The notes beneath the pieces were generated by a model that searched no databases, had not been told where the DNA came from, and saw nothing but the letters and a program-made list of their open reading frames with translations. Below, one piece after another: positions 7,580-55,345 of a stretch of 64,000 nucleotides of DNA (position 1 is its first letter; every line of letters begins with the position of its first letter). The translations under genes and the position numbers were made by a program. The stretch comes from Octopus bimaculoides. Taxonomy: Eukaryota. The stretch spans positions 44,625,833 to 44,689,832 of the forward strand of contig NC_069000.1 in the NCBI RefSeq assembly GCF_001194135.2, written 5' to 3'.

Positions 7580-9380
7580 TTTCTAGGCAAAGGACACAGG
7601 GCCAGAAACCCCAGAATCAGGTTGAATCAATTACATCGACCTCACTATGTGACTGGTGCTTTATTCCATCAACCTCAGAGGGGCAGAAAGCAAAAGCAAC
7701 CAGAGCAGGATTTGAACCCAGAATGTAAAGAGCTGGAGGAAATACTGCAAAACATTTCTTGTCTTCTGCTCAAACAGTTCTGACAGCTCACTGCCTTGAA
7801 AATACCGATAATAGCTTCCAATTTTGGCACAAGGCCAGCAACGTTAAAGGAGTGGAATTGGTTGATTACACTGACCCCCGGGGTTCGACTGCTAATTCTT
7901 TTATTGACCTTGAAAGGATAAAAGGCAAAATCGACCTCAGTGAAATTTGAACCCAGAGCATAGAGCTGAAGGAAATGTTAAGCATTTTTATTTGCCACGC
8001 TACCAATTCCACCAGCTCAGCCTTAATAATAATTCTAATTTTGGCACAAAGCCAGTAATTTTTAGAAGATACCATGGAGGGGAGAAAAGCAAAGCTGGTT
8101 TCAACAGGATTTGAACTCAGATCATAGAGAGCCAGAATGCATACCACAAGGCATGTTTTCTGATGATCTAACGGTTCTGCCAACCCACCACTCTTCAGAA
8201 CAGAGGTTTCAGTAATTTCGAAGGCTGGAGATTTAATTGATTACATCAACTCCAATATTTAACAAGTACTTCATTGTATCGATCCCAGAAGGATGAAAAG
8301 AGAAAGATGATTATTGTGGGGTTTGAACTCAGAACCTAAACTGCCAGAACAAACAAAACATTTCTCTCTCATGCTCAAACAATTCTACCAATCCACCACA
8401 CTCCATAATAATAATAATAATAATGGCTTCAAATTTTGGCACAAGGCCAGTAATTTCGGGGGTGGGGGGTGGGGGTGATAACATCAACTCCAGTGTTCAA
8501 CTGGTACTTAATTTATCAACCCCGAAAGGATGAAAGGCAAAGTTGACCTCGGCAGAATTTGAACTCAGAACATAAAGACAGACGAAATGCCAGCTCACCG
8601 GCTTAATAATAATAATAATAATAATCCTTTCTACTATAATGATGATGATGATGGTGGTCTCTAAATGTGATAGGAGTGGGTCAGTTGATAGCATTGACCC
8701 CATTATTCAACTGGTACTTTATTTTATCAACCCTAAAAGGATGAAAGGCAAATTTGACCTTGGCAGGATTTGAACTCAGAATACGAAGAGCTGGAGGAAG
8801 CCATTCAAAGCAGTTTTTCCAACTCCCCCAATGGTTCTGCCAGTTTGTCAGCTGATTTGATAAGAACGGGGGGGGGGGATAAGTCTTTTCCATTACAGGA
8901 ACAAGAGGAGGAGGAGGAGGTGTTGGCCGATCGTTTCAACCCCCAGTACTCAACTGGTACGTTATTTTATTAATCTCAGGTGGATGAAAGGCAAAGTGGA
9001 CCTCAGTGGAATTGGAGCTCTGAATGTAAAGGGCCAAAAGAAATGTTGCAAAAGATTGTGCCAACACACATCACATTAATGGTAATCGTAATAATAATAA
9101 TAATGATCCTTTCTACTAAAGGCACAAGGCCTGGAATTTGGAGGGCGGGGACCAGTCGATCACACTGACCCCAGTATTTCACTGGTTCTTAATTTATCGA
9201 CCCTGAAAGGTAAAGTCGACCTCAGCAGAAATTGAACTTAGAACGTAAGGACAGATGAAATGCTGAGAAACATTTTGCCTGGGATGCTTACAATTTTGCC
9301 AGCTCCCTATTAATCCTTTCTATTTGGTGGGGGGGAGGCTAGTCGATTACATCGACCCCGGTGCTTGACTGGTACTTAAT
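7580..9380 (-). mobile_element. Cluster of about 8 co-oriented SINE copies separated by (AAT)n tails
   Basis: Repeated blocks ggcacaaggcc / gattacatcgaccccag / aaggatgaaaggcaaagt / ggatttgaactcaga. Confidence 0.75.
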
Positions 9381-11159
9381 GTNNNNNNNNNNNNNNNNNN
9401 NNNNNNNNNNNNNNNNNNNNNNNNNNNNNNNNNNNNNNNNNNNNNNNNNNNNNNNNNNNNNNNNNNNNNNNNNNNNNNNNNNNNNNNNNNNNNNNNNNNN
9501 NNNNNNNNNNNNNNNNNNNNNNNNNNNNNNNNNNNNNNNNNNNNNNNNNNNNNNNNNNNNNNNNNNNNNNNNNNNNNNNNNNNNNNNNNNNNNNNNNNNN
9601 NNNNNNNNNNNNNNNNNNNNNNNNNNNNNNNNNNNNNNNNNNNNNNNNNNNNNNNNNNNNNNNNNNNNNNNNNNNNNNNNNNNNNNNNNNNNNNNNNNNN
9701 NNNNNNNNNNNNNNNNNNNNNNNNNNNNNNNNNNNNNNNNNNNNNNNNNNNNNNNNNNNNNNNNNNNNNNNNNNNNNNNNNNNNNNNACCAAAGCATTTC
9801 TACAGATATCGAAACAGGAAAAAAACAAAAAAACAATCGAAAAACGAAATAAAAAAGAAAATGATATTTAAACAGGAATTAAACAGGAATTCCAGAAATA
9901 ATTATGTTTGTTTCGCTATTTTTTTGCAATTTAAAGTAATTAATCGATTGCTATGAAAAAAAAAAAAAAACTTTGGAATTGATTGGCTTCAAAGACAAGA
10001 AGGGACAACATGAAAGGAAAGGTATGATAAGGGGGGGGGGTTGAAAGAAAAACCCAAAAATAACACCTTGGTTTCCAAAAAAAAAAAAAAAAAATTATTT
10101 AAAATGTATGAAATGAAAGATGACAATGTGAACAGAAAGAAAGTTAATCGGCCTCTGTAATTATCATTTACAGATTGTTCTTCTGGTTGTTGCTGTTCGT
10201 TATGTTTCACATCAATTAGTAATAATGATCATTTACAAACAAACTCAAGGCCTCACATTAATTAGTAGTGAAATAAATGGTTAAATTCTATCAAGCTTTG
10301 ACTTCCTCAAGAAGTGGTATGAATGAAGAACACTCAGCAAGATGCCGCCAAAACCCTAGTCGCAAATTTGGTTTCCAATTTGAGCTTCACCAGAGTATAA
10401 CTTAGTATTCTTGGTGCTGTTTACTGCATGCTAGTTCCAAAATAGTGATTCCTTATCAAACTGCAAAACCACCAAGTGTGAAATTGGACAAAATAAGTTG
10501 TTCCTTCTCCAGGAAGTTAAAAAAACAAAAAATGAAGTGTCTTGCCGAAGGTTGGTATTGTGACTTAATTTCTGCAGCAGGACAGGAACCTGAAGACCTG
10601 ACAGAACAAATAAAGTGTTGTATTTATTGGGGGTGCCAATCTTGTACCTTTTCTTCCCAGCCAAGCTTTATCTGAAGGGGGCCAAGTATAATAATAAAAA
10701 AAAAAAGGGGTGGAGGTTAGAAAATATTACTTACAAAAGACAAATGATGGGAAAGAATATTAAATTTGTTTGCAGGGTGAGATGACAGGGTTAGCATCAG
10801 TGAGGTCACAATCCAAAGACGGGGAAGGAAATCGTAGTGAAAGGGTGGAAACAAACAAGGCATTCATAATACTGGTTTTTGGTATTAGATGGGACAGTCA
10901 CTGTATAGGGCTATGATCTGGTGGTAAGGTTAGGGCACAGGGTTAGGGTCAGATGGTGAAATGAGGACATAGGTTCAGGGTCAGATGTTGAGGTCAAGAC
11001 AGAAGGTTAAAGTGTAAGATCTGAGTCTAGATTTAAGAGCAATGACAAAGCTGGATGCTCGTCTTAGGATGAAAGCAGAGACAAGGTTGTGGTGTAGATT
11101 TTGATCATGGGAGTGCTGCTTCTGAGGGAGACAGCACTGTCTTGAGTGGAAGGACACAG

Positions 11160-11278
11160 AATGAGAGAGAGAGAGAAAGGAGAGAGAGAGAAAGGAGAGA
11201 GAGAGAAAGGAGAGAGAGAGAAAGGAGAGAGAGAGAAAGGAGAGAGAGAGAAAGGAGAGAGAGAGAAAGGAGAGGGAG
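11160..11278 (+). repeat. 15-bp purine minisatellite (gagagagagaaagga)n, about 7 copies
   Basis: Directly visible tandem array downstream of the UBL-STPR stop codon. Confidence 0.9.
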
Positions 11279-11612: not shown

Positions 11613-13114
11613 TTAACTGACGGGGTTCGGAAATAAGTGGTAGTTCCTTTTTAATTTTTCACAGGTCTTGCATATCCACTGCTTCTGCTCATCAGCAAGT
11701 TTATTGGGGTCGTGATCTGGGATCAGCGAACCAGGAAATGGTGAAAATCGACTCAGTTGGTCTCTGGGCAATGGTCTTTCACACGAAATACACATATAGC
11801 CCAAACTCTGCTTAGAATACATTTGCATTCCAGCATCAGCAGATTTTCCATAGTTAACAACAGAAGAAGAAAATGCAGAACTAGAAGACTCAACCTCTTT
11901 TTTCCGATGACCATGGTCAGTTTTTTTCCTAACATCTGGCACCGATTTTAGATAAGAGCAGTTTCCATCGCGGTCAATATTACCGCCAGGGACCCCGTAT
12001 GGATTCATGTAGGAGAAGTTTGACATTCGATTTTGCTCAGGGATTATACAAGGGAAGTTTATATCTCTGTCATTGATGTTGCGACTTTGGTTTTGGTTGA
12101 AGAATGGATGGATCACACCACCAGCCTTATCGTTTGGGTCTTTGTTCTGTGACTGAACGCCATAAGGAAACATAGATGCCCTATCAGCTGAAGTGACTTC
12201 AGACTGATAGGGATTCAAGCAGAACGATCCAGCTGCCATTCCACTGCCACCCCCTGGTGTTGTTGCTCCACCACCGCCACCACCACCAGTTGCTGCTGCT
12301 GCCGTTGCCACAGAGACATCCGCACCGCCCCCTGCACCAGTTACTCCACGGTCGGCAGGGAGATTTTTGTTTTGTTCCTGATCCATGCAAGGGAAGACCG
12401 GGCCCTTGTCATGCGTGTCTTTGTTAGGGATCAACGTCATACCTGGAAACACTGGTCCTCCTAAACCAGCCCTGTCCAGTTCGTTCTTGTCAGCAATCTG
12501 ATCCATACACGGGAACACACTTCCCCTTTCAGGAACTATTTTGTTAACTTGATTTCGGCTCATAAACACATTGTCTCGATCCGACATTGTCTTGCCATGG
12601 TTTTCTGATGACATGTTCGACTTGGAGTAAAGGTAGTCCGATTGCCTGTTCGTCACTGCCTTTTGGTTTGAGCCGACGTATGCAAAATCAGGAGACTGTT
12701 CCTCGTTAGGATTCGGTTTTGAGGTCTGCAGACGGTCGTCTTTATTTTTCATTTGCTCAACACAGTAACTGTCTGCATTTCCATCTGGGCTGCAGGTGTC
12801 TGTGTAGCGTAACAGAGAATCCTGTTCAGCCAAAGTTGACCCCTTACCACGTGGTTTCTGTCCTGTCTTCATCATTTGGACCATAAGGCGCTTTCTCTCC
12901 ACACGCATCTTGGAATTCATTCGCATGCGTTCCAACCGTTTCTGACGTTCATCAGGTGACTCATTCTCTAAACGGCGCCGTTGGTACTGTCGCATCTGTT
13001 CCAGTCTTTTCTCACGAGGATTTATGCAGCCACCACTAAACTGGTTTCCATCAGATTTCGACCCCTGGTCACAGTTTGGTCCACACATCATGTTATTAGC
13101 ACATTCATAACAAT
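11613..13114 (-). CDS. Terminal coding exon of UBL-STPR gene: 2 x STPR-like repeats, spacer, C-terminal CxxC...WICKTC putative zinc-binding motif
   Basis: Acceptor tttatctatttgcag|AT at 13114 is phase 1 and in frame with the 492-aa ORF (adds DCYECANN before MMCG). Stop ends at 11613. Repeats at 13031-12894; YMCISC...WICKTC at 11798-11661. Confidence 0.88.
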
Positions 13115-14200: not shown

Positions 14201-14542
14201 ATTGCACATTTTTGTTTGGGCATTTGTCTCAATTTTTCCTCATCCTTTCTCTACTCACGGGTTGGACGGAGTTTATTGAGGCAGATTTTCAACAGCCAGG
14301 TGCCCTTTCCTGTTGCCAACCCTCACCTGTTTGTAGAATATTGGAAATGAATGATATTGCTTGCATGACACTGACAATCCTCTTACAACTACCACATGAA
14401 GTCAACACAAACATATGCACACCAACACACACACACACACATATACAGGATGGGCTTCTTTCAGTTTCCATCTACCAAGAGAGAAACATCATTACACAGT
14501 GGAAGAACTACAATAAATTCTTGATATCTTTATACTACTTAC

Positions 14543-15451
14543 CTTCATCAATAGAAGATATTGGTGGTGCGGAAAGACAATCGCATCCTTTTTTCCGCTT
14601 TTTGCAGTCTTGCGAGCATTTCATGTTAGCATAGCAGCCATCTTTCCCCATATTACAACTGTTCATGTAAGAATAATCGGACATACTGTTGGACATGGAT
14701 TTGTTTTGATCTGAAGAGTAGCAGCCAAAACTGTTTCCATCTCCGTTTGTGGTCACACGGTTCTGAATCTGGTTGAAAGACGGGAAGACAACTTCTCCGG
14801 TTGAACCCCTGTCCATCACATCTTTATTGGTATTGAGTGGTTCCATACAAGAGTAAGAGCCAGTCGAAGTTCCGTTCGAGTGGCTTCTGCTCTGGCATTG
14901 TCTACCGTTCTCTTTCATGCAAGGAAAATCTCCGTTGCAACATAAATTCTCTTGACGACACGACTTCCCACACGGGGCCGAGCAACAGGGGCTGTCTTGC
15001 ATGCTGCTACAACTTTTGTCATTCTGACACATGTAGCCGCAATCTTTATCCATGTTCTTGGAGCTTAATTTCATCGGGAAACTACCACCGTCCCGGTTAA
15101 GCATCGACTGGTATTGAAATATATTCTCGTTATCTTTCATCCGTCGCATCAGAATCGAAATCGCCTGCGACTTTTTTTTCCCTTTCTGAGAGTTTCCCAA
15201 CAGTTGTGCTATGGCTTTTTTCCTCTCTTCGCGTCGCCTCGCGTTTTCTCGCATGCGTACCAGCCTTTTCTGTCGATGCTCGGGGGGCTCGGTTGCCATG
15301 CGCTGGTGCTGATACCGTTTCATGCGCAGCAGTCGCTTTGTGCGCTGTGTATCGGTCTCTGTATGAAGACGCCTTCGTTGCTTCAATCTCATTTTTAGTA
15401 ATTTTCTGTCTTTTGGCGTCATCATCTCAGCTGTAGCGTTGTCATAGTAAT
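14543..15451 (-). CDS. Second coding exon of UBL-STPR gene: 3 x 23-aa STPR-like repeats plus Cys/Ser/Asn-rich spacer
   Basis: Acceptor tttgttttgtag|AT at 15451 and donor GAAG|GTAAGT at 14543, both phase 1; 909 nt, open throughout. Repeats at 15428-15222 followed by KKAIAQLLG, paralogous to RKAIAQILG in exon 1. Confidence 0.88.
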
Positions 15452-16823
15452 CTACAAAACAAATGACACAACAGAAACAAACATTAAGAAAATATGTTAG
15501 AAGAATAAAAAGAACGACAGAAAACAATTCTTACTAATTTTAACCCAAGGCTAGCAGTTCTGATGTGAAAGGGCAGGTTGATTACATCAACCCTAGTACA
15601 TGACTGGTACTCAAGATCCCTAAAGGATGAAAGGCAAAACTTGACCTCAGAACTTAATGCCAAAAGAAATACTGTTAAGCATTTTGACCAGCATTCTAAT
15701 GGTTCAACCATTCAACCGGCACACTACCTTAATAATAATAATAATAATAATCCTTTCAACTGAAAGTAGAAGGCCTGAAATTTGGGGTAAGGAGACTAGT
15801 TGATTACACCGGCCCCAGTGTTTCACTGGTACTAAATTTATCAACCCCGAAAGGATGAAAGGGAAAGTCGACCTCAGTGGAATTTGAGCTCAGAACATGA
15901 AAACGGACAAGCATTTTGCTCAGCGTGCTAAGGATTCTGCCAGCTTACCACCTTAAATAATAATAATAATAGTTATAGGGTGTGATGGTAATGGCTGCAG
16001 TAGAACTGTGGTAGTGATGTTGGCTTTAGTGTAGTAGTGGTTGTAGTAGTGCTGTGATGGTGGTGTCGGTGACGGTAGTGTTAGGGAGGCTGGGAAAGGT
16101 TACTGTTGTTCCACCCACCCCTGTTTTATTTATTTATTTATTTATTTATTGCAAAAAGAATCTCTGGGCAGATGGGAAGGAGAGGAAGCGTGCAGAAGGA
16201 GGGGGAGGGAGAGGAAGCAATCAGGATGCAGTGGCAGTTAATATCTATGTTGCTTAGCAACAGATCAGTCACTCCACGCCATCACCACTCCAATATACAC
16301 AACTACATCCCAATTCAGATATCACACACACACACACACACACACAAGCAGGCATACACACACAGACAGCCAAACATGTAGATACATGCACACACACACA
16401 CACACCTAAACATACACAAGATATTATCACCTCTGCAAGATAAGAAGCCGGTGGATTGAAAATACAGGCAGGAGAGAGAGAGAAAGAAAAGGGGTAGATG
16501 GAGAAAGAGATAGAGAAAGAGTGGGGGAGAGAGAGTGAGAGAGAGAGAGAGAGACAGAAAGGAGACTGGTAAGAGAAGTATGTATGGAAATACATCAATA
16601 TGTATATGAATGCAAATGTGTGTAGATGAGCGTGTGTGTGTGTGTGTGTGTGTATGCGTGAGTATATATATATATATATATGTATGTATGTACATATATA
16701 TATGTGTGTCTGCATGCGTAAATAAAAATATGTGTGTATATGTGTGTGTTTGTAAATGAATGTGTGTGTGTGTGTAGATGAATGTGTGTGTGTGTGTAGA
16801 TGAATGTGTGTGTGTGTGTGTGT

Positions 16824-17676
16824 NNNNNNNNNNNNNNNNNNNNNNNNNNNNNNNNNNNNNNNNNNNNNNNNNNNNNNNNNNNNNNNNNNNNNNNNNNNNN
16901 NNNNNNNNNNNNNNNNNNNNNNNNNNNNNNNNNNNNNNNNNNNNNNNNNNNNNNNNNNNNNNNNNNNNNNNNNNNNNNNNNNNNNNNNNNNNNNNNNNNN
17001 NNNNNNNNNNNNNNNNNNNNNNNNNNNNNNNNNNNNNNNNNNNNNNNNNNNNNNNNNNNNNNNNNNNNNNNNNNNNNNNNNNNNNNNNNNNNNNNNNNNN
17101 NNNNNNNNNNNNNNNNNNNNNNNNNNNNNNNNNNNNNNNNNNNNNNNNNNNNNNNNNNNNNNNNNNNNNNNNNNNNNNNNNNNNNNNNNNNNNNNNNNNN
17201 NNNNNNNNNNNNNNNNNNNNNNNNNNNNNNNNNNNNNNNNNNNNNNNNNNNNNNNNNNNNNNNNNNNNNNNNNNNNNNNNNNNNNNNNNNNNNNNNNNNN
17301 NNNNNNNNNNNNNNNNNNNNNNNNNNNNNNNNNNNNNNNNNNNNNNNNNNNNNNNNNNNNNNNNNNNNNNNNNNNNNNNNNNNNNNNNNNNNNNNNNNNN
17401 NNNNNNNNNNNNNNNNNNNNNNNNNNNNNNNNNNNNNNNNNNNNNNNNNNNNNNNNNNNNNNNNNNNNNNNNNNNNNNNNNNNNNNNNNNNNNNNNNNNN
17501 NNNNNNNNNNNNNNNNNNNNNNNNNNNNNNNNNNNNNNNNNNNNNNNNNNNNNNNNNNNNNNNNNNNNNNNNNNNNNNNNNNNNNNNNNNNNNNNNNNNN
17601 NNNNNNNNNNNNNNNNNNNNNNNNNNNNNNNNNNNNNNNNNNNNNNNNNNNNNNNNNNNNNNNNNNNNNNNNNNNN
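16824..17676. other. Assembly gap inside intron 1 of UBL-STPR gene. Other gaps at about 567-609, 7433-7536, 9383-9787, 29950-29959, 42359-43033, 47788-47811, 51225-51234, 52037-52424, 60385-60594.
   Basis: Runs of N. Confidence 0.99.
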
Positions 17677-18937: not shown

Positions 18938-21179
18938 ATCTACAGCTTAAACTGGATTTGGTATTTACATATCCACAATATCCCACAAACACCTGATACC
19001 TTCATGCTTGTTTTTACCTCACTGTGAACCTGATGGTATTGCACCTAGCCATTTGTGGCGTCCTACATCTTGATGTACCTGGATTCTATTGAATCCTATA
19101 GCTAATCTATATGTGTGTGTGTGTTGTTAATATGCTTCTATAATGCAAAACATAACCACTTATTTAGGACTGCATATGCCCTATAACATTCCAATACATA
19201 CACCCAGTAAATATATTCGTGTTAAAATACACCTGAACACATAATGTAGGTGTGCAGGCTGTAATAATAAAGATGATTGATTTAATGACTTTAATCTATT
19301 TTCCAAATAAAGGATCTTTAATTTCACACATCAAAAGCAAAAAGACTGCTCACGTCATGAAAGTGCACACACACACATATATGCAAACAAACGGATGCAC
19401 ACATACACACACAATATATATGTAATTTTGGGGACTAATGGGTATAAGTGAATTAATGTTGAGTAAAGCACTTTCACAGTATGGGGCTACCTGGTGTCAT
19501 CCATGGTTGGAGTATATTTTTCTGCTGGATTTACATCAGGAATTCTGCAGTGTTGGTTGAGGTAATAATAATCGATGAAGGAAACAGAGGATAGATTTGG
19601 TATTAGACTTTATTCAGTACGACAATTGTTTCGACCCATCCTGCAACTGTCCATTATGGGTACGATTTTGTGCATGAATCTCCACAGTTTGTGGAGATGC
19701 ATAATCATCATCATCATTTAACATCTGCCTTCCATGCAGGCATAAATGATATATATACATACATACATATATATAAGGAGAGAGAGAGAGATGGTGCCAT
19801 ATAAAAAGCACCAAGTACACTCTGTAAAGTGGTTGAAATTAGGAAGGGCATCCAGTCATAGAAACCCTGCTGAAGCACAATTGGAGCCTGGTGCAGCTCT
19901 CTTGCTGGCCAGCTCCTGAAACCATCCAACCCATGCCAGCATGGAAAGCAGAAGTTAAATGATGATGATGATGATACACGTACATACTTACAGATATATA
20001 AAAATCTGCCCCAATGAATGCTGTCTGCAAGCATGAAAAAGTGGATGTTATAAATGATGATGATGGTATTCATATCATCATCCTCTTTACGTCTGTTGTC
20101 CCCATGCTTGCATGGGTCGGACAAGTACTGTCCAGTACATCATACTCCCATCACTTGCAGTATTCCTTTGTCATAATTTAACCCCTTAACTCTTAACATA
20201 AAGCCACCACTCTTAGGGTGTATAGCCTTGCAAGTTGTGCGACTACCTCACTAGTGCCTGCAGCACATAAAACAAAACACCCAGTACACTCTGTAAAGTG
20301 GCTGATGTTAGGAAGGGCATTCAGCTGTAGAAACCATGCCAAAGCAGACCAGACATTGATGTAGTCTTTGGCCCAAGCAAATCCTGTCAGATCATCCAGC
20401 CTATAACATTGTGGAACATGGACATTAATCCTTTATAATACTTTATTAATCCATATTGTTTCAAACTAACCATGGCCCTATCTCATAAATTCGAGATTCC
20501 AATGATGTAACTGTTTATATTTAAAGTAACAGTGCGGGGTAGGTGTGAGAGGCCAGATCTGGCCAATTTAATCATAAAATGGAACAAACATCTGAGCCAG
20601 ACATGGCTTGTTTAAACGTTGTTCCCTCGAACTGGCACAGGTCATTAGAGTGTTGAGTAGAATGCCTTGTGGTATTTCTTCCAGCTCCCACTCTGTGCTC
20701 TGAGTTCAAATCTGCTTTTCATCCTTTTGGGGTTGATAAAAAACAAGTCTCAGGTGAGAGTGATCGACTGTTAGAATTATCAGAGCATCAGATGGGATAC
20801 CTTGTCATTGCAGTTCCAGCTTTATGTCTTGTGAGTTCAAATCCCACCCTGAGACTGAGAAATAGTGACATCTTCTGACAGAAGTTGCGAATAAAAGATA
20901 GTGCATCCATCCTCATTTATCACAGAAGTTTGGTTCCAAAAACACTGATAAAAGAATCATCTCCATGCGTTTTGTAAATGGAATGAATAATAAATTCACA
21001 TATTTTTATTGATCATCTCTACATTTTCCTGTACACTTGTTTGTGTATTTTTGCTAGGATTAAGTGCCTTCATACAAATGAATGGTAGAATCACCAGCAC
21101 AAACTTCGTGGCTCAGAGCAGCAAAGTTTCTACCATCATCTAATTATTTTCATCATCTCTACCTTCTCCCATATCAAAT

Positions 21180-21500: not shown

Positions 21501-23225
21501 ATGCTTGCATATATCTTCTATCTTTTACTTGTTTCAGTCATTAGACTGCGGCCATGCTGGGGCATTGCCTCGGAGAATTTTTGGCAAACAAGTTGATCCT
21601 AGTACTTACTTTTCTTTTTAGCCTCCAATCTTCTATGGAAAATATGTCTGGCCATGGGGGAATATTACCTTACTTGGAAACATGTACAGTTGGGGACAGA
21701 AAGGTCATCCAGCTGCCTCAACAAATTCAAGCCAACCCATGCAAGCATGGAAAAGTGAACATTACAATAATGATGATGCACACATATAGTTTAAAGGTGT
21801 GTGGCTATGTGATTAAGGTGTTTGCTTCCCAATTGTGTGGTTGTAGGTTCAATCCCACTGAGTGGCACCTAAGGTAGGCCTAGGTATTTTGTCTTTTTAT
21901 TCTTTTACATGAGTCAGTCATTTGACTGTGGCCATGCTGGAGCATCGTATTTAGTCAAATAAATCAACCCCAGGACTTATTCTTCGTAAGCCTAAAACTT
22001 ATTATGTCGATCGCTTTTGCCGAACTGCTAAGTTACGGGGACGTAAACACACCAACATCGGTTGTCAAGCGATGGTGGGAGACAAACACAGACACACAAA
22101 CATATACATACATACAATGGGCTTCTTTCAGTTTCCATTTACCAAATCAACTCACAAGGCTTTGGTCAGCTCGGGGCTATAGTAGAAGACACTTGCTGAA
22201 GGTGCCACACTGAGGGACTGAACCCAGAACCATGGGAGGCAAGCAACCTACCACACCTGCACCTATGTTTAGAAATATGTCTGTGTGCTTGTTTAAATTT
22301 GCACCGCTCTCAAATTTGCTCAGCAACACGCAGTGATGTTATTGTCATTTCCCCATATCAATGGATCACCTGCTAACTTTGTAATCTTGAAGATGTGTGG
22401 AAATAAGATGTCTAGCATTTGTAAAACACTGGTGAGGGTTAGCAACAGGATGGGCATTCAGCTGTCAAAAACTTGCCACAATAATATATTCATCAAACTC
22501 ATGCTGGCATGGAAAACAGACATAAAATGAACCAACAAAATATACGTTTGAGAATGTCTATATACACACACATACGTGTGTGTATACATACATATATATA
22601 TATTTTTTCTTTTATTTGTTTCAGTCACTTAACTGCGGCCATGCTGGAGCACCACCTTTAGTTGAACAAATTGACCCTAGGACTTATTCTTTGCAATCCT
22701 AATACTTACTCTTTTAGTCTTTTTTGCCGAACCGCTTAGTTACAGGGTCGTAAACACATTAACATCGGTTGTCAAGACACACAAACATATACATATGATG
22801 GGTTTTCAGTTTCCATCTACCAAATCCAATCACAAGACTTTGGACAGCCCGGGGACTGAACCTGGAACCATGTGGTTGGGAAGCAAGCTTTTTACCACAC
22901 AGCCACACTTATAATGTTAATGTTTGTTTTTACGCTCAGTTATTATAAAAGCAATTTTACATTAATCAGATGGGTTACTCTACATATATGTGGGTGTGTG
23001 TATATATATATATTTGTATATATACATATGCATATATTTGTATATTTATATACACACATATGTATATATGCATAGACATATATATGTTTATACACATGAA
23101 CACAGATGTACATTATATGTATAGCAATATATATATATATATACATGTACATACATACATACTATATAAGCATTAACATAATGAGCTGTAAACATTATCC
23201 TATCATTACAATTTGAATTACTCAC

Positions 23226-25140
23226 CTTGACTAATGAGTGGCGAAAATGAAGACCCCAACATGTATTCAAGCTTCCTCTCTAGGGTCCCTACATCTTCTA
23301 ATTGCCCAAAGTCAGCTCCTGTTTCGCCCGGACTGAATGTGGATTTTTTCTTCTTGCGCTTCATTGCTTTCGGTGTAAATGAACAGGATGAATTACCAGT
23401 CTTCTGTTGACCACCAATGTCCAGTAATGTCAAATTGTTACTTTGGTCGCTCTGGCCAGCTTTCGCCGCCGTTCCTTTGCTCGATGGATCAAGTGAACTT
23501 TGAATGGCATCCAGGTTTAACAGATCTTCACTTCGAGGAGTCATTATCTCAGTTCGTACACAGTCAACTTGGGTTGGCTTATAGTTAGGCTTGAGATAAG
23601 GAAAAGCCCCATCTCTATCAGAGAGGCCCAAACCTTGAGCTGCACTAATATAAGAAAATCCACCATCTCTTTCATTCGTTCCAGTTTTACCATTCTCTTC
23701 ACTGATATTACTTTGGGGTGATGTCAGGCAATCAAAGCCCATTTCTTTATCAGTCATGTCTTTATTTTGGTTAGAATGCAAGTGAGAAAATATTCCAGAA
23801 GTATCTGCTTTATCTGCCATACCCTGTTTGTTGAGGCCATCCTTTTCCATAGTTGAGTCCATACAAGGTAAAACAGCCCCACCAGCCGATCCGCGCTCCA
23901 TCCCAGGTTTGTGTCCACCTTGCTGGTTCCTATTCTGGCACTGACTGTTGTTCTCTTTCATGTAAGAGTATTCTCCATTGGAATTTTTCTGACTTGAATC
24001 TAGATAAGACAAATCTCCTTGCCTGTTGTTCTTGTCACATTGGTTGGTGAACCCTGATCCATCCTGGGTATTACAAACATTTTTATCATTTTGACTTAAA
24101 TAGCTGAAATCATCTTGTCTATCATTTGGGTCTTTCTGGCCTTGTTGCTCCATGGATGGAAATCCTTGATTACGACCTGATATATTCTTTGAGTTCATTC
24201 TCATGAAAGACAGGTTGTCGCCGGCTTGTCTCATCAGTAATTCAGCAGTTGAGGTCTTTTTCCGCCCCCTCTTACAAGAAGATCCCAATATCTGTGCTAT
24301 AGCTTTTCTCCTTTCGACGCGCATTCGCGCATTTTCTTTCATACGTATCAGTCTTTTGTGTCTACCATCTGCGTCTTCGGTCTGCATTCGATTCCGTTGG
24401 TTTTTTTGAAGTCTCTGCAAGCGCCTCGATCGATCAGGCTCACTTTCGATATCAATCCGTCGATGTTGATTTATCCTTAACCGCATCAACCTAGCTTCCC
24501 TCTCCGCTAAAGTTTCTCGGGCACGTTTAGCCCGTTCGTAAGCTTTCATCTGCTCCAGCCGCATCTGTTTGTCTTCCAGTGACATATTAGCGTAACGTTT
24601 CCTCTGATATTCTCTCTTTCGGATCTTTTTTTCGCTTCTTTTCTCGTCGTCAACTGAAAACGATCGAGATTGTCTATCGATCCGGCAGTTACCGATCTGA
24701 TGATCAGAATAGCAGCCATAGCTATAGTTGCCATCACAAAAAATCTCGGAAGTGGTGTTACAGTCTAAACATCCGTTTGAAGAATTGAGAAAAACATCCG
24801 GATCGCTGTCATACAAGCTTTCGAAGTTACTGAGGTCAGTTCGGTCGCAGACCTTCCGCGTTTTCGTAGTCTTAGCATGTATTTTACATTCGATGTAGTT
24901 GTTTGTGGGCTTTATGTTCTGTTCGGAGAGAGGGAAATACCATAAGAGGATTTTACCGTTGTGGGTCACACAAAAGTTCTTGCTATCGTAGATAGTTCGA
25001 CTAAGGATGTCACAGAGCGTCTGGTGAGGTTGAAAATCGAGAGTAAAATCACGTCCTGAATCGATTCTGAAGCAAATCTTCATTGCTGCTCCACTACTCG
25101 CTTGTCCTTTCGACATATCACTATAGTTGCAATCAGACAT
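23226..25140 (-). CDS. First coding exon of UBL-STPR gene: ubiquitin-like domain, 4 x 23-aa STPR-like repeats, low-complexity spacer, basic NLS-like KRKKKK
   Basis: 640-aa ORF. Residues 20-90 (MKICFRIDSGRDFTLDFQPHQTL...GKILLWYFPLSEQNIK) align by eye to ubiquitin ([23 protein letters not shown]...GKQLEDGRTLSDYNIQ). Four exact 23-aa repeats at 24585-24310. Phase-1 donor CAAG|GTGAGT at 23226/23225, just before the ORF stop. Confidence 0.88.
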
Positions 25141-28140: not shown

Positions 28141-29439
28141 ATGTCACAACTTACAGCCTCCGGTGCAAATCATCATGATACAAGTAACTCTTTTCCAATA
28201 TTCAGATGGCTTCCAGACCATCATTTCAGCTCTCTTTTTTTCTCCACTACAACTTTAATCTTTATATTCTCCAACACTGTTAACATCAAGCTGTTCCTGA
28301 AAAAAGAAGACAAAAAAGAACAAATTTAACCCAGACACCCAGCATGTATAATATATATACACATAAAAGCACCTTTTGAGTGTTGGGTCTCACGGCAATA
28401 GCAAATGACTGAGGCCCTTGGCATTATGTTGTGCTTGAAAGGCAGCGAGCTGGCAGAAACATTAGTACGAGTTCAAATTTTGCCAAGGTCGACTTTGCCT
28501 TTCATTCTTTTGGGGTCAATAAATTAAGTACCAGTTGCATACTGGGTCGAACTAATTGATCTCCCCCAAAATTTCAGGCCTTGTGCCTAAAGTAGAAAAG
28601 ATCATGTTATGCTTGAGAAGAAGACTCAACAACATTATTGCACATCTCTTAAATATAGAACTGTAAGACCCATCTTGCCAAGTAAAATTGCAATCATGGC
28701 AGATACTGGTGTCACACAAATGGCACGTAAAAGCACCCATTACACTCTCAGAGTGGTTGGTGTTAGGAAGGGGCATCCAGCCATAGAAAGCCATACCAAA
28801 TCAGACTGGAGTCTGATGCAGCTTGCTAGCCCTGGTCAAACCATCCAACCCATGCCAGCTTGGACAACGGGTATTAAATGACGATATATATGTACATGTG
28901 GGTTTGATGGTACGAATAGGGTTGATAGAACTCGAAACATCATCACCACCATTTAACATGTGTTTTCTGTGCTTGCAAGGGTTGGACATGTCAACAGGAG
29001 GTGGTGAGACACAGGAGCTGTACCAAGCATCACTGTCTGGTAAAGTTTCAACAGCTGGGTGCCCTTCCTTGTGTCCAACTTGGTGAGGGTCGGTGACAGA
29101 AGGGCGTCCTGCCATAAAAATCTGTCTGACCCGCACAGAGATGGGGAAGTGTCTTCTACTACAGCCTTGGACTGACCAAAGCCTTGTGAGTGGATTTGGT
29201 AGACGGAAACTGAAAGAAGCCCATCATATATATATATATACATATGGCAAATGAAAGACGAAAGATGGAATATACGAGAATGTATTAGTAATCACAATTG
29301 TTTCGACACATCTAGCATCGATCTCCCATGGATGGGACTCGCAACGACTGGTTCAGGAGCATCTGGCAGTATCTCGTCAGGTGATACAGGTGTAAACCAG
29401 TCATTTTATTATCCATTATATATATCAACTGCAACAGCA

Positions 29440-31465: not shown

Positions 31466-32215
31466 TTAAAATACTGTGAGAAGGGCAAATACTCCGTAGA
31501 CTAGAGCACATGGATAGGCAACAAGGAGCTGCTGGTGATCCATTGCTAGGGCAGAGACAAACAGCTTTGAGGCCGAGAAACTACACCAGAAAACTGCCAT
31601 GACAGTTAGGAATATACCAAGGGCTCCCTTCAAAGAGATCATGACAGATACAGACGATAGGATAACCATTGGTAATAGACAATAGCCTAATACACTTATT
31701 GTACATCCAGACGAAACACCAGTGATACTCATCAAGTTTAACAGACCATACATGGCAAGGCATCCTACAACCCCGATACCATAGATGTAACCAAAGTGCA
31801 GTTTGCCAGACAGCATCAAAGCAGCACCGAAAGCAATGCAGAATACTAAAGGTCCAGCCAGATCAGTGTCCTTCATTATGTTGTGGTCAGCATCTTGTAA
31901 CGGGTTCAATACGGCCATTGTCTTTTGTGTGATGTGGTCAAAGTTAATGCCCAATTCTTCCATTAGTGGTGGCTCATCCTCAAAACTGTCTGGTGCTGTA
32001 GTCTGGTAGACAGTCGGTTCCGGTGTCATAATAGAACCAAAATATGGATCTTGACTGTTGGTCGTGATGTATTCTGTAGTGGTGGTCTGGCTGTAGACAA
32101 ACTGACCGAACTGAGGTTCCTGGCCAAAGCCTTGAGTGTCCATGTTATATCCAGAACTTTGGTTTTCATAGTAGTTGGATGAGTAAAATTCTCCTTCTTG
32201 GCCGAAAGAAGACAT
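31466..32215 (-). CDS. YIPF5: Yip1-domain Golgi/ER membrane protein, YIPF5/YIPF7 family; single coding exon
   Basis: 249-aa ORF with family motifs [67 protein letters not shown]. Context ccaaaATGt. Polypyrimidine acceptor ttctttccag|A at 32237 shows an upstream 5'-UTR intron. Confidence 0.95.
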
Positions 32216-32517: not shown

Positions 32518-33794
32518 TTAAGGTGATCTAAAAACTTTCCATCAAAATTTATGTTCCAAACACCAGCTTAAATATTTACAGCTATTTTACTGAACTCTTT
32601 GTCATTTCCAAAATTTATTGAAACCGTTGGGCCTCAGAGAGGCAATGACAAAAGACCAAGACCTCTGGAGATCTGCTGTGATTGAGAAGACCCGGCAAAT
32701 AAAGTGAGTGCACAGCTGTAACCTACACCAGTGTTGCATAACCTGCCCCAGCCCACTCAAAAGTACCTTGGATCGTAGAGCGACATGCCATGCTTGAGGA
32801 GACTTATTGAGTCAAGTACATTAAAATCAAATGGAAACTGTAGTTGTGATTCCCGTGCCGGTGGCACGTAAAAAGCATCATCCGAACATGGCCGATGCCA
32901 GCGCTGCCTTGACTGGCTTCCATGCCAGTAGCATGTAAAAAGCACCAACCAATTGTGGTCGATGCCAGCCCCCTCTGGCCCCTGTGCTGGTGGCACATAA
33001 AAAGCACCCACTACACTCTCGGAGGGGTTGGCGTTAGGAAGAGCATCCAGCTGTAGAAACTCTGCCAGATCAGACTGGAGCCTGGTGCAGCCTCCTGTCG
33101 AACCGTCCAACCCATGCCAGCATGGAAAGCGGACGTTAAACGATGATGATGAGAAGCAGACGTATGGCAGCAAAAAGGTTAAACTAAAACGTTGAGGGTT
33201 AAATGCAAGAAAAATGCAGCACAAATCAGTTTGACTGGACATTGAATAAGAGAAATATTTTTGAAAATGGAGCCAAATATGGCCCTCAACTTGAATACAT
33301 TAAGGTACTTTGATACGGAATTGAAAGAAGAAATGGAAGATCAAACTAGTGAAGTAAGGAGAAAAGTTCCGAGCAATTATCTTGGATTTAATGAAAAGCA
33401 ATCACTGACAGATATACAAGAAGAAATAGCTGACATTGTTTATCAGAGTCCTTCACTGGTTTAATTGTAGATAAACCAAGTGGTAGAGACATGTGAGGGA
33501 CATTAGCAGGTTATTGTAGCCATCAGAGTGGTATAGATCTGTGGAAGGTGGCCAGTAGTGACTGTAGTTAATCCATGTGGTATAGATATGTGATGGGTAA
33601 GTACATGTGGCTGGTGGTTGTAGCTAACCTAAGTGATATGGATATGCAATTGCAAAACACTTGTGGCCGAAAGCTAAATGAAAGAGTACAGTCATATTAT
33701 TTGGTAAGTACTAGAGGATAATAATAGATAAACCAATGGTACAGACATGTGATAGATAAATACTATTGAGTAATTATAGCTAGATTATAGCTAA

Positions 33795-42358: not shown

Positions 42359-43033
42359 NNNNNNNNNNNNNNNNNNNNNNNNNNNNNNNNNNNNNNNNNN
42401 NNNNNNNNNNNNNNNNNNNNNNNNNNNNNNNNNNNNNNNNNNNNNNNNNNNNNNNNNNNNNNNNNNNNNNNNNNNNNNNNNNNNNNNNNNNNNNNNNNNN
42501 NNNNNNNNNNNNNNNNNNNNNNNNNNNNNNNNNNNNNNNNNNNNNNNNNNNNNNNNNNNNNNNNNNNNNNNNNNNNNNNNNNNNNNNNNNNNNNNNNNNN
42601 NNNNNNNNNNNNNNNNNNNNNNNNNNNNNNNNNNNNNNNNNNNNNNNNNNNNNNNNNNNNNNNNNNNNNNNNNNNNNNNNNNNNNNNNNNNNNNNNNNNN
42701 NNNNNNNNNNNNNNNNNNNNNNNNNNNNNNNNNNNNNNNNNNNNNNNNNNNNNNNNNNNNNNNNNNNNNNNNNNNNNNNNNNNNNNNNNNNNNNNNNNNN
42801 NNNNNNNNNNNNNNNNNNNNNNNNNNNNNNNNNNNNNNNNNNNNNNNNNNNNNNNNNNNNNNNNNNNNNNNNNNNNNNNNNNNNNNNNNNNNNNNNNNNN
42901 NNNNNNNNNNNNNNNNNNNNNNNNNNNNNNNNNNNNNNNNNNNNNNNNNNNNNNNNNNNNNNNNNNNNNNNNNNNNNNNNNNNNNNNNNNNNNNNNNNNN
43001 NNNNNNNNNNNNNNNNNNNNNNNNNNNNNNNNN

Positions 43034-49564: not shown

Positions 49565-50077
49565 CTTTATAATTACATCTCAGTCCATAATAATTCTTTG
49601 CACAACCATCAATACAGTAGCCATTGTAAGGATAGCAGCTTCCATGGAGGCAGTGACCACATTTCTGACAGATTTTACCATGTTTGTAATATCCAGCTTG
49701 GCAACCAGTATAACCAAGTCCATCACCGTAACTGTGACCAAGATAATATTGAGGAGCATAACCTTGACCATGACCATGACCATAACCATGATGGTGGCCA
49801 TAACCTAATCGGCGACCATGACCAAATCGGCGACCATGACCAAATCGGCGACCATGACCAAATCGGCGACCATGACCAAATCGGCGACCATGACCAAATC
49901 GGCGACCATGACCAAATCGGCGACCATGACCAAATCGGCGACCATGACCAAATCGGGGGCCATAACCATGATGACGACGATAACCATGATGACGACGATA
50001 TGGACGACCGTATCGAATTCCATGGTGATAACCGTGGCCATAATGTGGTGAGTTACCATAACCATATCCATAAGAAG
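49565..50077 (-). CDS. His/Gly/Arg-rich (RRFGHG)n exon plus one EGF-like module
   Basis: 513 nt, ttatttgcag|CT ... AAAG|GTAGGT, phase 1-1; about 8 copies of an 18-bp unit; ends GCQAGYYKHGKICQKCGHCLHGSCYPYNGYCIDGCAKNYYGLRCNYK. Confidence 0.88.
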
Positions 50078-50244
50078 CTGCAAATAAATTCAGACGATAG
50101 AATCAGATATTATCATTTTGGGATATCATAAATAAATTATGATGCTATAAAAACTCTCCCTACCACACTCTAGCTACCTTTACCTGAACCTACAGGTCAT
50201 CACTCTGTCTCTCATCCGTCTCTTATTTACTGTATCATATATTG

Positions 50245-52537: not shown

Positions 52538-52599
52538 GTACATTTTCTCAAACAATAAAGCAACAAAAATACTAATAACTCAGAGTGTTAGTAATTTAC

Positions 52600-53223
52600 C
52601 TTTATAATCACATCTCGGTCCATAATAGCTTAATTGACAACCCCCAGTGCAGTAACCACTGTAAGGGTAACAGTATCCATGGAGACAGTGACCACATTTT
52701 CGGCAGATCTTGCCATATCTGTAATATCCTGCATCACAACCAGCATAACCATAACCGGGACCATATCCATAACCTTGACCATAACGAAGTCCATAACCAC
52801 CAAAGCCATAGCCATGTCCATAACCGTGACCAAGATGACGACTGTAGCGGCGGCCAGGACGACCATAATGGTGGCCAGGATGACCGTAGGGGTAACCACC
52901 TCTGGAACGATAACCATGACCATGAAGGAAACCTTGGTGGTAACCATAAACATGACGACGACCATAACCATAACCACCACCGTGACGATAACCATGACGA
53001 TGACCATGACGATGACCATGACGATGACCATGACGATGACCATGACGATGACCAGGACGATGACCAGGACGATGACCATGACGATGACCAGGACGATGAC
53101 CAGGACGATAACCATGACGATGACCATGATGATGACCATGACGATGACCATGACGATGACCATGACGATGACCATGACGATGACCATGACGATGAACATT
53201 ACTGTAGCCGTGGCCATAGGATC
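52600..53223 (-). CDS. His/Arg/Gly-rich (HRHG)n exon plus GYG-rich segment and one EGF-like module
   Basis: 624 nt, ttatttacag|GA ... AAAG|GTAAAT, phase 1-1; 18 four-residue HRHG-type units at 53194-52979; ends GCDAGYYRYGKICRKCGHCLHGYCYPYSGYCTGGCQLSYYGPRCDYK. Confidence 0.9.
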
Positions 53224-53371
53224 CTGTAAATAATTGCAAACAAATTAATTAGATTTCATTAACAAAAACACTGTCATTTCTTTACTACATAGCCATATAT
53301 ATATGTGTGTGTGTTATATTATGCTTGTATACATAGACATATTTAATCTATTATTATCATTGTCATTATCA

Positions 53372-54483: not shown

Positions 54484-55262
54484 CCTCATTGCCATCATTG
54501 CTCTAATGCTCATTTTCCCGTGCTCTCATGGGTCGTATGGAATTTATTGAGACAGAGCTTTTTTACAGCAGGATGCCCTTCCTGTCACCAACCCTCACTT
54601 ATTTTTCAAGCAAGGTAACATTTCTTCCATGACCAGAGATGCTTTTACAGAATGTAAAGAGGCATAACGAGATACTGCTACTGCTAATTTGCTTTCCTTT
54701 GTATAATATTAATAATGGCTTCTGAGCTTAACTGATTGGAAGTGTTATCATGTTCATTGTTCTGTCTTGGTATAAAAGATGGGATACAGCAAATATTCTA
54801 CTCAATACAACAGATTTGCTTGTCAGTTGCTTGGATTTAACCAGTTGAGCATGGCCCTTGGTGGCTGACGATATGTGCATCTCTGATCACGAGTAGAAGT
54901 AGTGGGGGAGCATCGTAGCCATGTGTTGAGAGGAATTCTTTGGGGTTTGGATAATTCACCTTTGGAAAGATGGGTGTTTTGCTCAACATCCTTAAACAAC
55001 TCTTATTAAGGGACCTTTTGAGTGTGATGGGCTAATCGACCTGAAGAAAATTCTAACTGGGGTCCACCTGCAAGGTCATGCGCTGTTTATCTTGATCCCA
55101 GTATGCAACTGGTACTAATTTATCGACCCCCGATAGGATGAAAGGCAAAGTCGACCTCGGCAGAATTTGAACTCTGAATGTAAAGACAGATGAAATACCG
55201 CTAAGCATATCGCCCAGCATGCTAATGTTTCTGCCAGCTCGCTGCCTTAATAATAATAATAA

Positions 55263-55345
55263 TAGAATGTCCAACTTGCTGCTCTTTGAGGTCTCTGGGT
55301 GAGACGTAGAACAACTCATAAAACGAAGCAATGATAATGTAAATA
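55263..55345 (+). mobile_element. Short 3'-UTR fragment of R4/Dong-like element
   Basis: gaggtctctgggtgagac is shared with the 3' UTR of the 60038-60855 element; follows an (AAT)n tract. Confidence 0.5.

What the first reader, a model, noticed from the sequence alone, without database searches (positions are those of the whole stretch)
11661..11798. C-terminal CxxC...WICKTC motif plus STPR suggests a domesticated Helitron N-terminus
Seen: YMCISCERPLPRDQL-(about 25 aa)-WICKTCEKLK immediately before the stop. From recollection of animal Helitron-type Rep/Pif1 ORFs, STPR-like E(T/S)xExRxxRL repeats and a Y(I/V)CxxCxR...WICxTC zinc motif occur upstream of the Rep and helicase domains. No Rep or helicase sequence is visible here, and the gene has introns and a promoter-like region. 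Inference: a host gene recruited from a Helitron, keeping only DNA-binding parts.
Basis: inference. Interest (0 to 1): 0.7.

Follow-up and report, generated by a model that had tools for sequence, protein, structure and literature searches.

The report
Helitron-type zinc finger in octopus gene
The last ~60 residues of a conserved three-exon octopus gene form a four-cysteine zinc finger whose only relatives found outside cephalopods sit at the front of Helitron (rolling-circle transposon) transposases, so the gene most likely kept a transposon's DNA-binding head and lost the rest.

Summary
The motif is real and sits exactly at 11798..11661 on the minus strand. It reads YMCISC-x34-WICKTC. The stop codon is 15 codons after the last Cys, not immediately after. 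It ends the 1441-aa Octopus bimaculoides gene LOC106870383, which has three coding exons. Each exon encodes an STPR array followed by a low-complexity stretch. Only exon 3 carries the zinc motif.

An exhaustive search of 1.84 billion proteins found cephalopod homologues and one other genuine hit. That hit is the N-terminal ORF of a Helitron-like element, followed by Rep and PIF1 ORFs, and it carries five copies of the motif. Its E-value is inflated by the repeats, so I collected six more elements from metagenomes. All six place the motif directly before DUF6570, and one has 23-residue STPR-like repeats upstream.

A Helitron-only profile scores the octopus C-terminus at 23-32 bits (Cys-preserving shuffles reach at most 16.6). 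hhalign gives 97% probability. The window holds no Rep, helicase or DUF6570 remnant.

The gene is syntenic with YIPF5 in O. vulgaris and under purifying selection (dN/dS 0.13; no nonsynonymous changes in the motif).

Homology to the Helitron N-terminus is well supported. The direction (transposon to host) and the DNA-binding function are inferred.

The parts
23226..25140 (-). Coding exon 1 of LOC106870383 (aa 1-638): conserved N-terminal region, first STPR array, low-complexity region; ends at donor GTCAAG|GTGAGT
   Evidence: the spliced CDS translates exactly to XP_014771913.1 / P0010
24310..24585 (-). STPR array 1 (aa 186-277; four 23-residue units)
   Evidence: 23-residue period read directly from the sequence
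14543..15451 (-). Coding exon 2 (aa 639-941): second STPR array plus a Cys-rich and low-complexity region; no zinc motif at its end
15222..15425 (-). STPR array 2 (aa 648-715)
   Evidence: (PF21107, 32.2 bits)
11613..13114 (-). Coding exon 3 (aa 942-1441 plus stop): third STPR array, low-complexity FPCMDQ..NK repeats, C-terminal zinc motif
12894..13025 (-). STPR array 3 (aa 972-1015)
   Evidence: PF21107, 28.1 bits; FMBP-1 5d23, E 8.6e-6
11661..11798 (-). The finding: C4 zinc motif YMCISCERPLPRDQLSRF...KQWICKTC (aa 1381-1426). First CxxC at 11781..11792, second CxxC at 11661..11672
   Evidence: the AF2 core resembles a treble-clef zinc finger, with knuckle, hairpin and a helix starting at the second CxxC
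11613..11660 (-). Tail EKLKRNYHLFPNPVS plus TAA stop. It aligns with the residues that lead into DUF6570 in Helitron proteins (C-D-x-x-LKRGK-M/L-P-x-QAK)
   Evidence: the Pfam DUF6570 match starts 7-14 residues after the last Cys in all seven elements

Best explanation
The motif is the C-terminal zinc-binding module of a genuine, selectively constrained cephalopod host gene (O. bimaculoides LOC106870383, 1441 aa, three coding exons).

The gene's basic unit is one intronless block: STPR repeats, then a low-complexity spacer, then a C4 zinc finger. This mirrors the front end of HLE2-type Helitron transposases, which run (STPR-like repeats), the same zinc finger, DUF6570, (OTU), Rep and PIF1 helicase.

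The most likely history is that a fragment of a Helitron transposase ORF, cut off just as DUF6570 begins, was recruited as a host gene in a cephalopod ancestor and then duplicated. In Octopus, three such units became spliced into one transcript, and only the last keeps the zinc finger.

Inferred function: a nuclear DNA-binding protein. The three STPR arrays would lie along the DNA major groove, as in FMBP-1. The transposase-derived zinc finger would add a second nucleic-acid (or partner-protein) contact. The protein would act as a transcription regulator, or as a competitor of Helitron transposase at its binding sites.

Shown: gene structure, conservation, synteny, purifying selection, STPR membership, similarity of the zinc motif to Helitron N-termini, and absence of catalytic domains. 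Inferred: direction of transfer, zinc binding, DNA binding and biological role.
For: Gene model and identity.

STPR. The structural mechanism of STPR comes from PMC4856987.

Exhaustive phmmer of the last 82 aa against 1.84e9 representatives gave only cephalopod homologues and P0003. P0003 is DUF6570+OTU and is followed by Helitron_like_N and PIF1/endonuclease ORFs on its contig.

Six further elements (L005-L010) carry the motif directly before DUF6570. L005 also has OTU and Helitron_like_N in the same ORF.

A Helitron-only HMM scores the octopus C-terminus at 32.4 bits (11 copies) or 23.3 bits (six loci only). Among 5000 Cys-preserving shuffles the maximum was 16.6 bits. The first half of the motif, which was not used to select those six loci, scores 8.3 bits, reached by 7 of 5000 shuffles. 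hhalign of the cephalopod profile against the Helitron profiles gives 96.7-97.6% probability, P 3e-10 to 3e-12.

Whole Helitron ORFs searched against the window have their best hits on 11813..11643, and nothing else in the window matches.

STPR-like repeats lie upstream of the zinc motif in Helitrons. L010 has units at an exact 23-residue period, scoring 18.4 bits against a cephalopod STPR-unit HMM (0 of 500 shuffles reach this). L005 gives a sub-threshold Pfam STPR match at 16 bits. The HELIANO paper lists STPRs among the domains stably carried by Helitron-like elements. N-terminal zinc-finger-like motifs are described as general to Helitron proteins (PMC5148889).

Host-gene status: one locus on record per Octopus genome, Yip1/YIPF5 upstream in O. 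bimaculoides and O. vulgaris, dN/dS 0.13 overall and 0 nonsynonymous changes in the zinc region.

The unit structure is supported by single-ORF homologues P0015 and P0018. Each has STPR, low-complexity region and zinc motif, and they lie on separate contigs of another assembly. They match exon 3 and exon 2 respectively at nucleotide level.
Against: Per-copy pairwise similarity to the Helitron protein is only 7-13 bits. The database E-value of 1.3e-8 is inflated by five repeats, in the same way as the obviously spurious bacterial repeat hits in the same list.

The six extra loci were retrieved with peptide patterns partly derived from the octopus sequence. This biases the second half of the motif.

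The motif is short, and its predicted fold is a generic treble-clef-like zinc finger with no informative structural neighbour.

The literature assigns Pfam STPR hits mainly to HLE1 and DUF6570 to HLE2, so the pairing seen here is not the commonly reported one. L005's repeats do not match the cephalopod STPR unit model.

Helitrons are well known for capturing host genes, so the transfer could have gone from host to transposon. The host organisms of the metagenomic Helitron contigs are unknown. Expression, zinc binding and DNA binding were not tested.
Confidence: 0.6

Rival explanations
1. Reverse direction. The cephalopod gene belongs to an older host family of STPR-plus-zinc-finger DNA-binding proteins. 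Some HLE2 Helitrons captured that module and fused it in front of DUF6570-Rep-Hel.
For: Helitron-like elements repeatedly capture host domains, and HELIANO treats STPRs as a captured accessory domain. The region upstream of the zinc motif varies between elements: repeats in L005 and L010, none detectable in L007-L009, and a quite different long repeat region in P0003. Host STPR transcription factors exist independently of transposons (FMBP-1, ZNF821).
Against: The zinc motif abuts DUF6570 in all seven elements, which fall into at least three divergent sequence groups, whether or not repeats lie upstream. Host proteins with the motif were found only in cephalopod-type sequences among 1.84e9 representatives. 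The host protein ends on residues that align with the lead-in to DUF6570. This is easier to explain as a truncated transposase ORF than as the source of a capture.
Confidence: 0.2
2. Coincidental resemblance. The C-terminus is an unrelated cellular treble-clef C4 zinc finger that shares a few residues around its cysteines with Helitron N-termini.
For: Single-copy alignments score only 7-13 bits. A profile search of PDB sequences returns only C2H2-array artefacts with a similar K-x-Y-[VI]-C-x-x-C context. Fold search gives generic zinc fingers with E above 0.6.
Against: Cys-preserving shuffles never reach the real profile score (0 of 5000). hhalign gives 97% probability. Five different elements hit the same 170 bp of a 64-kb window. 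STPR-like repeats lie in the same order upstream in L010.
Confidence: 0.15
3. The locus is a decaying transposon fragment or pseudogene wrongly annotated as a gene.
For: The low-complexity composition and the internal triplication look transposon-like. No expression data were examined here.
Against: An intact 1441-1443-aa ORF across conserved canonical splice sites in three Octopus species. dN/dS 0.13, with dS 0.17. A conserved neighbour gene. No Rep, helicase or DUF6570 remnant.
Confidence: 0.05

Closest known systems
N-terminal region of HLE2 (Helentron/Helitron2-type) RepHel transposases, upstream of DUF6570 (PF20209)
   Same: The same C4 motif, [YF]-x-C-x-x-C-x-R-x-[LM] ... K-[QS]-[WY]-I-C-K-T-C-[DEH], with comparable spacing. 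STPR-like 23-residue repeats lie upstream in at least one element. The tail aligns with the lead-in to DUF6570.
   Different: The octopus gene has no DUF6570, OTU, Rep (Helitron_like_N), PIF1 helicase or endonuclease. It is single-copy, syntenic, spliced and under purifying selection. About 330 residues of low-complexity sequence separate its STPR array from its zinc motif, against about 30 in L010.
STPR transcription factors (Bombyx FMBP-1, PDB 5D23; human ZNF821)
   Same: Pfam STPR arrays of 23-residue units, and a significant sequence match to the FMBP-1 STPR domain. These are expected to bind double-stranded DNA as an extended helix in the major groove (PMC4856987).
   Different: From my own knowledge, not tested here: FMBP-1 has a single C-terminal array and no zinc finger, and ZNF821 combines STPR with classical C2H2 fingers. 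The octopus protein has three arrays in three exons and a C4 Helitron-type finger at its end.
Host genes built from transposase DNA-binding domains (for example THAP, ZBED, CENP-B and FHY3/FAR1-type domestications)
   Same: Keeps a putative nucleic-acid-binding head of a transposase, has lost the catalytic part, and is conserved and constrained as a host gene.
   Different: The source would be a rolling-circle Helitron rather than a cut-and-paste transposon. My literature searches found no described protein-coding domestication of a Helitron N-terminus. Absence from these searches is not proof.

Membership tests
STPR domain proteins (Pfam PF21107) | Pfam STPR match above the gathering score | tested here: met
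   Exon 3 ORF scores 28.1 bits and exon 2 ORF 32.2 bits (cut-off 27). The O. sinensis ortholog scores 60.2 bits with 4 stretches.
STPR domain proteins (Pfam PF21107) | Tandem units of 23 residues with E-x-x-E/D-x-R-x-x-R-L | tested here: met
   Units read directly from the sequence, for example ETLAEREARLMRLRINQHRRIDI / ESEPDRSRRLQRLQKNQRNRMQT.
STPR domain proteins (Pfam PF21107) | Sequence similarity to the solved FMBP-1 STPR domain | tested here: met
   5d23_A at E 8.6e-6, query residues 24-63.
STPR domain proteins (Pfam PF21107) | Binds double-stranded DNA | not testable with these tools
   Needs EMSA, DAP-seq or similar.
Autonomous Helitron-like element (RepHel transposase) | Rep / HUH domain (Helitron_like_N, PF14214) | tested here: not met
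   No Pfam hit in the protein. No tblastn hit of Helitron ORFs anywhere in the window outside the zinc motif.
Autonomous Helitron-like element (RepHel transposase) | PIF1-type helicase domain | tested here: not met
Autonomous Helitron-like element (RepHel transposase) | DUF6570 (HLE2 marker) | tested here: not met
   No Pfam hit. Only the 15-residue tail aligns with the residues leading into DUF6570. There is no remnant downstream of the stop.
Autonomous Helitron-like element (RepHel transposase) | [quoted passage not shown] | tested here: met
   Helitron-only HMM at 23-32 bits against a shuffle maximum of 16.6. hhalign at 97%. Reverse tblastn.
Autonomous Helitron-like element (RepHel transposase) | Multi-copy, with Helitron termini and hairpin | tested here: inconclusive
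   One copy in the window and one locus on record per Octopus genome. Whole-genome copy number and termini could not be searched.
Domesticated transposon-derived host gene | Orthologous single locus with conserved neighbours in several species | tested here: met
   O. bimaculoides, O. sinensis and O. vulgaris orthologs. Yip1/YIPF5 lies upstream in O. bimaculoides and O. vulgaris. Synteny outside Octopus is not shown: L003 and L004 have no YIPF5 within 10 kb.
Domesticated transposon-derived host gene | Purifying selection on the transposon-derived part | tested here: met
   dN/dS 0.13 for the whole gene. In the zinc region, 0 nonsynonymous against 3-4 synonymous differences. This region is small, so that count alone is weak.
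Domesticated transposon-derived host gene | Direction transposon to host shown by phylogeny or taxon distribution | not testable with these tools
   No curated Helitron library or non-cephalopod mollusc genomes were available. The motif is too short for a tree.
Domesticated transposon-derived host gene | Transcribed and translated | not tested
   The only support is annotation-based gene models and Logan contigs of unknown type.
Classical C2H2 zinc finger | C-x2-4-C-x12-H-x3-5-H | tested here: not met
   No His pair follows either CxxC. The PDB profile hits to PRDM9 arrays are repeat-summed artefacts of 2-8 bits each.

The most novel reading that the evidence does not exclude
Cephalopods carry a small lineage-specific gene family descended from the N-terminal nucleic-acid-binding head of an HLE2 Helitron transposase (STPR repeats plus a C4 zinc finger). 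This would be the first described protein-coding domestication of that part of a Helitron. The product may recognise Helitron-derived sequences, acting either as a repressor that competes with the transposase or as a transcription factor wired through dispersed Helitron copies.
Probability: 0.45. Interest if true: 0.65.

Novelty: new member of a known kind. Interest (0 to 1): 0.5.

Why it matters
Host genes built from transposase DNA-binding domains are a recognised source of new regulators. Nearly all documented cases come from cut-and-paste transposons. A constrained cephalopod gene that keeps only the zinc finger and STPR head of a rolling-circle Helitron would extend this route to another transposon class.

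It would also offer a way to study the uncharacterised N-terminal region of HLE2 transposases, meaning the segment before DUF6570.

Finally, it would add a candidate lineage-specific DNA-binding protein to cephalopod genomes, which are already known for large expansions of zinc-finger genes and transposons.

Tried and rejected
- The search for homologous proteins returned nothing in three attempts: the 90-aa tail, the exon 1 ORF, and the motif alignment. It missed even the O. sinensis ortholog, so it was uninformative here.
- The raw E-value of P0003 (1.3e-8) was rejected as proof once the per-domain scores were seen to be 7-13 bits. Hits P0005-P0008 are repeat-driven artefacts.
- Four scans of viral contigs found no relative.
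- The PDB profile search gave only C2H2-array artefacts and did not list any Helitron transposase.
- Foldseek of the AF2 model (mean pLDDT 62) gave only generic treble-clef neighbours with E above 0.6.
- The AF2 model of the N-terminal 184 aa, run without an alignment, was too poor to use (pLDDT 39).
- I looked for remnants of a zinc motif after exons 1 and 2, and for DUF6570, OTU, Rep or helicase remnants anywhere in the window. None were found.
- L005's repeats did not match the cephalopod STPR unit model.
- The HELIANO supplements were not available as text.
- A C2H2 reading of the motif was rejected because there is no His pair.

Full report
**Where the finding sits**

The window is from Octopus bimaculoides chromosome CM046620.1, assembly GCA_001194135.2. 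On the minus strand, 11798..11661 encodes YMCISCERPLPRDQLSRFSPFPGSLIPDHDPNKLADEQKQWICKTC. The reading frame continues with EKLKRNYHLFPNPVS, and TAA is at 11615..11613. So the stop is 15 codons after the last cysteine, not immediately after KLK.

The motif lies at the end of a 492-aa ORF (11613..13091).

**Gene structure**

Two further large minus-strand ORFs (14535..15527 and 23218..25140) are paralogous to that ORF.

- The public annotation lists a 1441-residue product starting at 25140.
- Exactly one combination of canonical GT/AG sites gives 1441 aa. The exons are 25140..23226, 15451..14543 and 13114..11613.
- The spliced CDS translates exactly to XP_014771913.1, 'uncharacterized protein LOC106870383', which UniRef names 'STPR domain-containing protein'.
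- Each exon encodes an STPR array followed by a low-complexity region rich in FPCMDQ..NK-like repeats.
- Pfam STPR (PF21107) scores above its cut-off in exons 2 and 3, and reaches 60 bits in the O. sinensis ortholog. The solved FMBP-1 STPR domain (5d23) matches at E 8.6e-6.
- The zinc motif occurs only once in the window, at the end of exon 3.

**Is it a host gene?**

- O. sinensis (XP_029647615.2) and O. vulgaris (CAI9737178.1) have 1443-aa orthologs with the same three exons.
- In O. vulgaris the upstream neighbour is a Yip1 gene. In the window the equivalent is the YIPF5 ORF at 31466..32215.
- Nei-Gojobori dN/dS between O. bimaculoides and O. sinensis is 0.13 for the whole gene (dS 0.17). 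The last 67 codons have 0 nonsynonymous and 3-4 synonymous differences.
- This is a constrained single-locus gene, not a decaying transposon copy.

**Relatives of the C-terminus**

The search for homologous proteins was uninformative. An exhaustive phmmer search of the last 82 residues against 1.84 billion representative proteins gave eight hits:

- the O. sinensis ortholog;
- two clusters of cephalopod-type homologues, P0002/P0015 and P0004/P0018;
- P0003;
- four bacterial or other repeat proteins that are plainly spurious.

P0015 (482 aa) and P0018 (512 aa) come from one ENA assembly but from different contigs. Each is a single ORF made of STPR, low-complexity region and zinc motif. At nucleotide level their STPR parts match octopus exon 3 and exon 2 respectively. 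So the ancestral unit seems to be one intronless block carrying its own zinc finger. Octopus has three such blocks spliced together, and only the last keeps the finger. That history is inference.

**The Helitron link**

P0003 (1779 aa) carries five copies of Y-[VL]-C-I-[SA]-C ... [YW]-I-C-x-T-C. The last copy is directly followed by DUF6570, then an OTU domain. On its contig the next ORFs are Helitron_like_N and PIF1, with a weak endonuclease signal. This is therefore an HLE2 (Helentron-type) element.

Its E-value of 1.3e-8 cannot be taken at face value. Each copy scores only 7-13 bits, and the sum is inflated in the same way as for the spurious repeat hits.

I therefore looked for independent elements. 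A metagenome scan seeded with three motif copies returned six loci, L005-L010.

- All six place the motif immediately before DUF6570.
- L005 continues in the same ORF into OTU and Helitron_like_N.
- Their second half reads K-[QS]-[WY]-I-C-K-T-C-[DH]; two of them have KQWICKTC, as in octopus.
- In the L005, L006 and L008 group the motif is followed by LKRGK-[ML]-P-x-QAK. The octopus tail LKRNYHLFPNPVS aligns with this.

**Statistical tests**

- An HMM built only from Helitron copies scores the octopus tail at 32.4 bits (11 copies) or 23.3 bits (the six loci alone).
- Among 5000 shuffles that keep the cysteines in place, the mean was 0.9 bits and the maximum 16.6.
- The six loci were selected by a pattern that partly reflects the octopus second half. 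I therefore scored the first half alone. It gives 8.3 bits, reached by 7 of 5000 shuffles.
- hhalign of the cephalopod-only profile against the Helitron-only profiles gives 96.7-97.6% probability, P 3e-10 to 3e-12.
- In the reverse direction, whole Helitron ORFs searched against all six frames of the window have their best hits, for five different elements, on 11813..11643. Nothing else in the window matches, so there is no DUF6570, OTU, Rep or helicase remnant.

**STPR in Helitrons**

- The HELIANO study lists STPRs among 20 accessory domains stably carried by Helitron-like elements, mostly HLE1. It identifies DUF6570 as an HLE2 marker lying in the RepHel ORF (PMC11417382).
- In L010, seven units at an exact 23-residue period (DATEKQxRLSDMxxNSQTWYNSM) lie about 30 residues upstream of the zinc motif. 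They score 18.4 bits against a cephalopod STPR-unit HMM, and 0 of 500 shuffles reach that score.
- L005 has 23-residue ET..ETAQR repeats with a sub-threshold Pfam STPR match (16 bits, E 0.015). These do not match the cephalopod unit model.
- So the order 'STPR-like repeats, then this zinc finger' exists in at least one HLE2 N-terminus. This is the same order as in the cephalopod unit.

**Structure**

AF2 with a ten-sequence alignment gives a modest model (mean pLDDT 62, 70-80 in the core). It has a knuckle at the first CxxC, a beta-hairpin, and a helix beginning at the second CxxC. That is what a treble-clef zinc finger looks like.

Foldseek finds only generic zinc fingers with E above 0.6. 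A PDB sequence-profile search finds only C2H2-array artefacts. The motif lacks the His pair of a C2H2 finger.

**Interpretation**

Homology between the cephalopod C-terminal finger and the HLE2 N-terminal finger is well supported. Four points favour descent from a truncated Helitron ORF:

- The finger is fused to DUF6570 in every element examined, across at least three sequence groups.
- Host proteins with the motif were found only among cephalopod-type sequences.
- The whole unit is intronless.
- The host protein stops where DUF6570 would begin.

Capture in the opposite direction is not excluded, because Helitrons do capture host domains and the hosts of the metagenomic elements are unknown.

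Function is inferred. STPR arrays bind along the DNA major groove (PMC4856987). Helitron N-terminal zinc-finger-like motifs are a general feature of these proteins (PMC5148889); that they bind nucleic acid is my assumption. The product is therefore most likely a nuclear DNA-binding regulator, possibly one that recognises Helitron-derived sequences.

My literature searches found no described protein-coding domestication of a Helitron N-terminus.

Noticed in passing
window 31466..32215 (-): Single-exon 249-aa YIPF5-like ORF (Pfam Yip1), about 6.3 kb upstream of the STPR gene on the same strand. The same neighbour is annotated in O. vulgaris (L012).
   Followed up: partly
window 24841..25140 (-), aa 1-100 of the gene: The N-terminal ~160 residues are the most constrained part of the gene (dN/dS 0.04) and have no Pfam match. 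A single-sequence AF2 model shows a beta-beta-alpha-beta-beta order reminiscent of a ubiquitin-like fold, but at pLDDT 39, so it is unreliable.
   Followed up: partly
window 13114..13060 (-), exon 2/3 junction: The junction encodes a small extra cysteine cluster, DCYECANNMMCGPNC (CxxC-x5-CxxxC). Exon 2 also has a Cys-rich stretch (CGYMCQNDKSC...CCSAPCGKSC...CCNGDFPC). It is unclear whether these bind metal.
   Followed up: no
L003 10001..11449 and L004 10001..11539 (ENA ERZ21867824): Two separate single-ORF homologues (P0015 is exon-3-like, P0018 is exon-2-like), each ending in its own zinc motif, on different contigs of one unidentified assembly (GC 0.29-0.32). This implies that the octopus exon 2 unit lost its finger.
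   Followed up: partly
window 52580..53239 (-) and 49598..50131: A His/Gly/Tyr-rich repetitive ORF (HRHGHRHG..., GYGYG...) that ends in a Cys-rich EGF-like segment, CRKCGHCLHGYCYPYSGYCTGGCQLSYYGPRCDY. A second repeat ORF of similar composition lies nearby. This may be an exon of a structural or matrix protein.
   Followed up: no
window 60364..60825 (-): A fragment resembling the C-terminal zinc-knuckle tail of a non-LTR retrotransposon ORF (CRICQQQNETIDHVVSMC), interrupted by an assembly gap.
   Followed up: no
window 8497..9067, 19714..20124, 28801..29136, 32757..33242, 55053..55394: Recurring short ORF fragments ('FAFHPFGVDK...' and 'FPCWHGLDG...') that look like two families of dispersed repeats.
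   Followed up: no
window 11160..11270: A purine-rich tandem repeat with a 13-bp unit (GAGAGAGAGAAAG-like), about 350 bp downstream of the gene's stop codon.
   Followed up: no
L002 7217..12556 (P0003): This Helitron N-terminal ORF carries five copies of the zinc motif, set in two long internal duplications before DUF6570. The other six elements have one copy each.
   Followed up: partly
window, ten N runs (e.g. 9383..9787, 16824..17676, 42359..43033): Assembly gaps. One of them (16824..17676) lies inside intron 1 of the gene, so that intron's content is incomplete.
   Followed up: no
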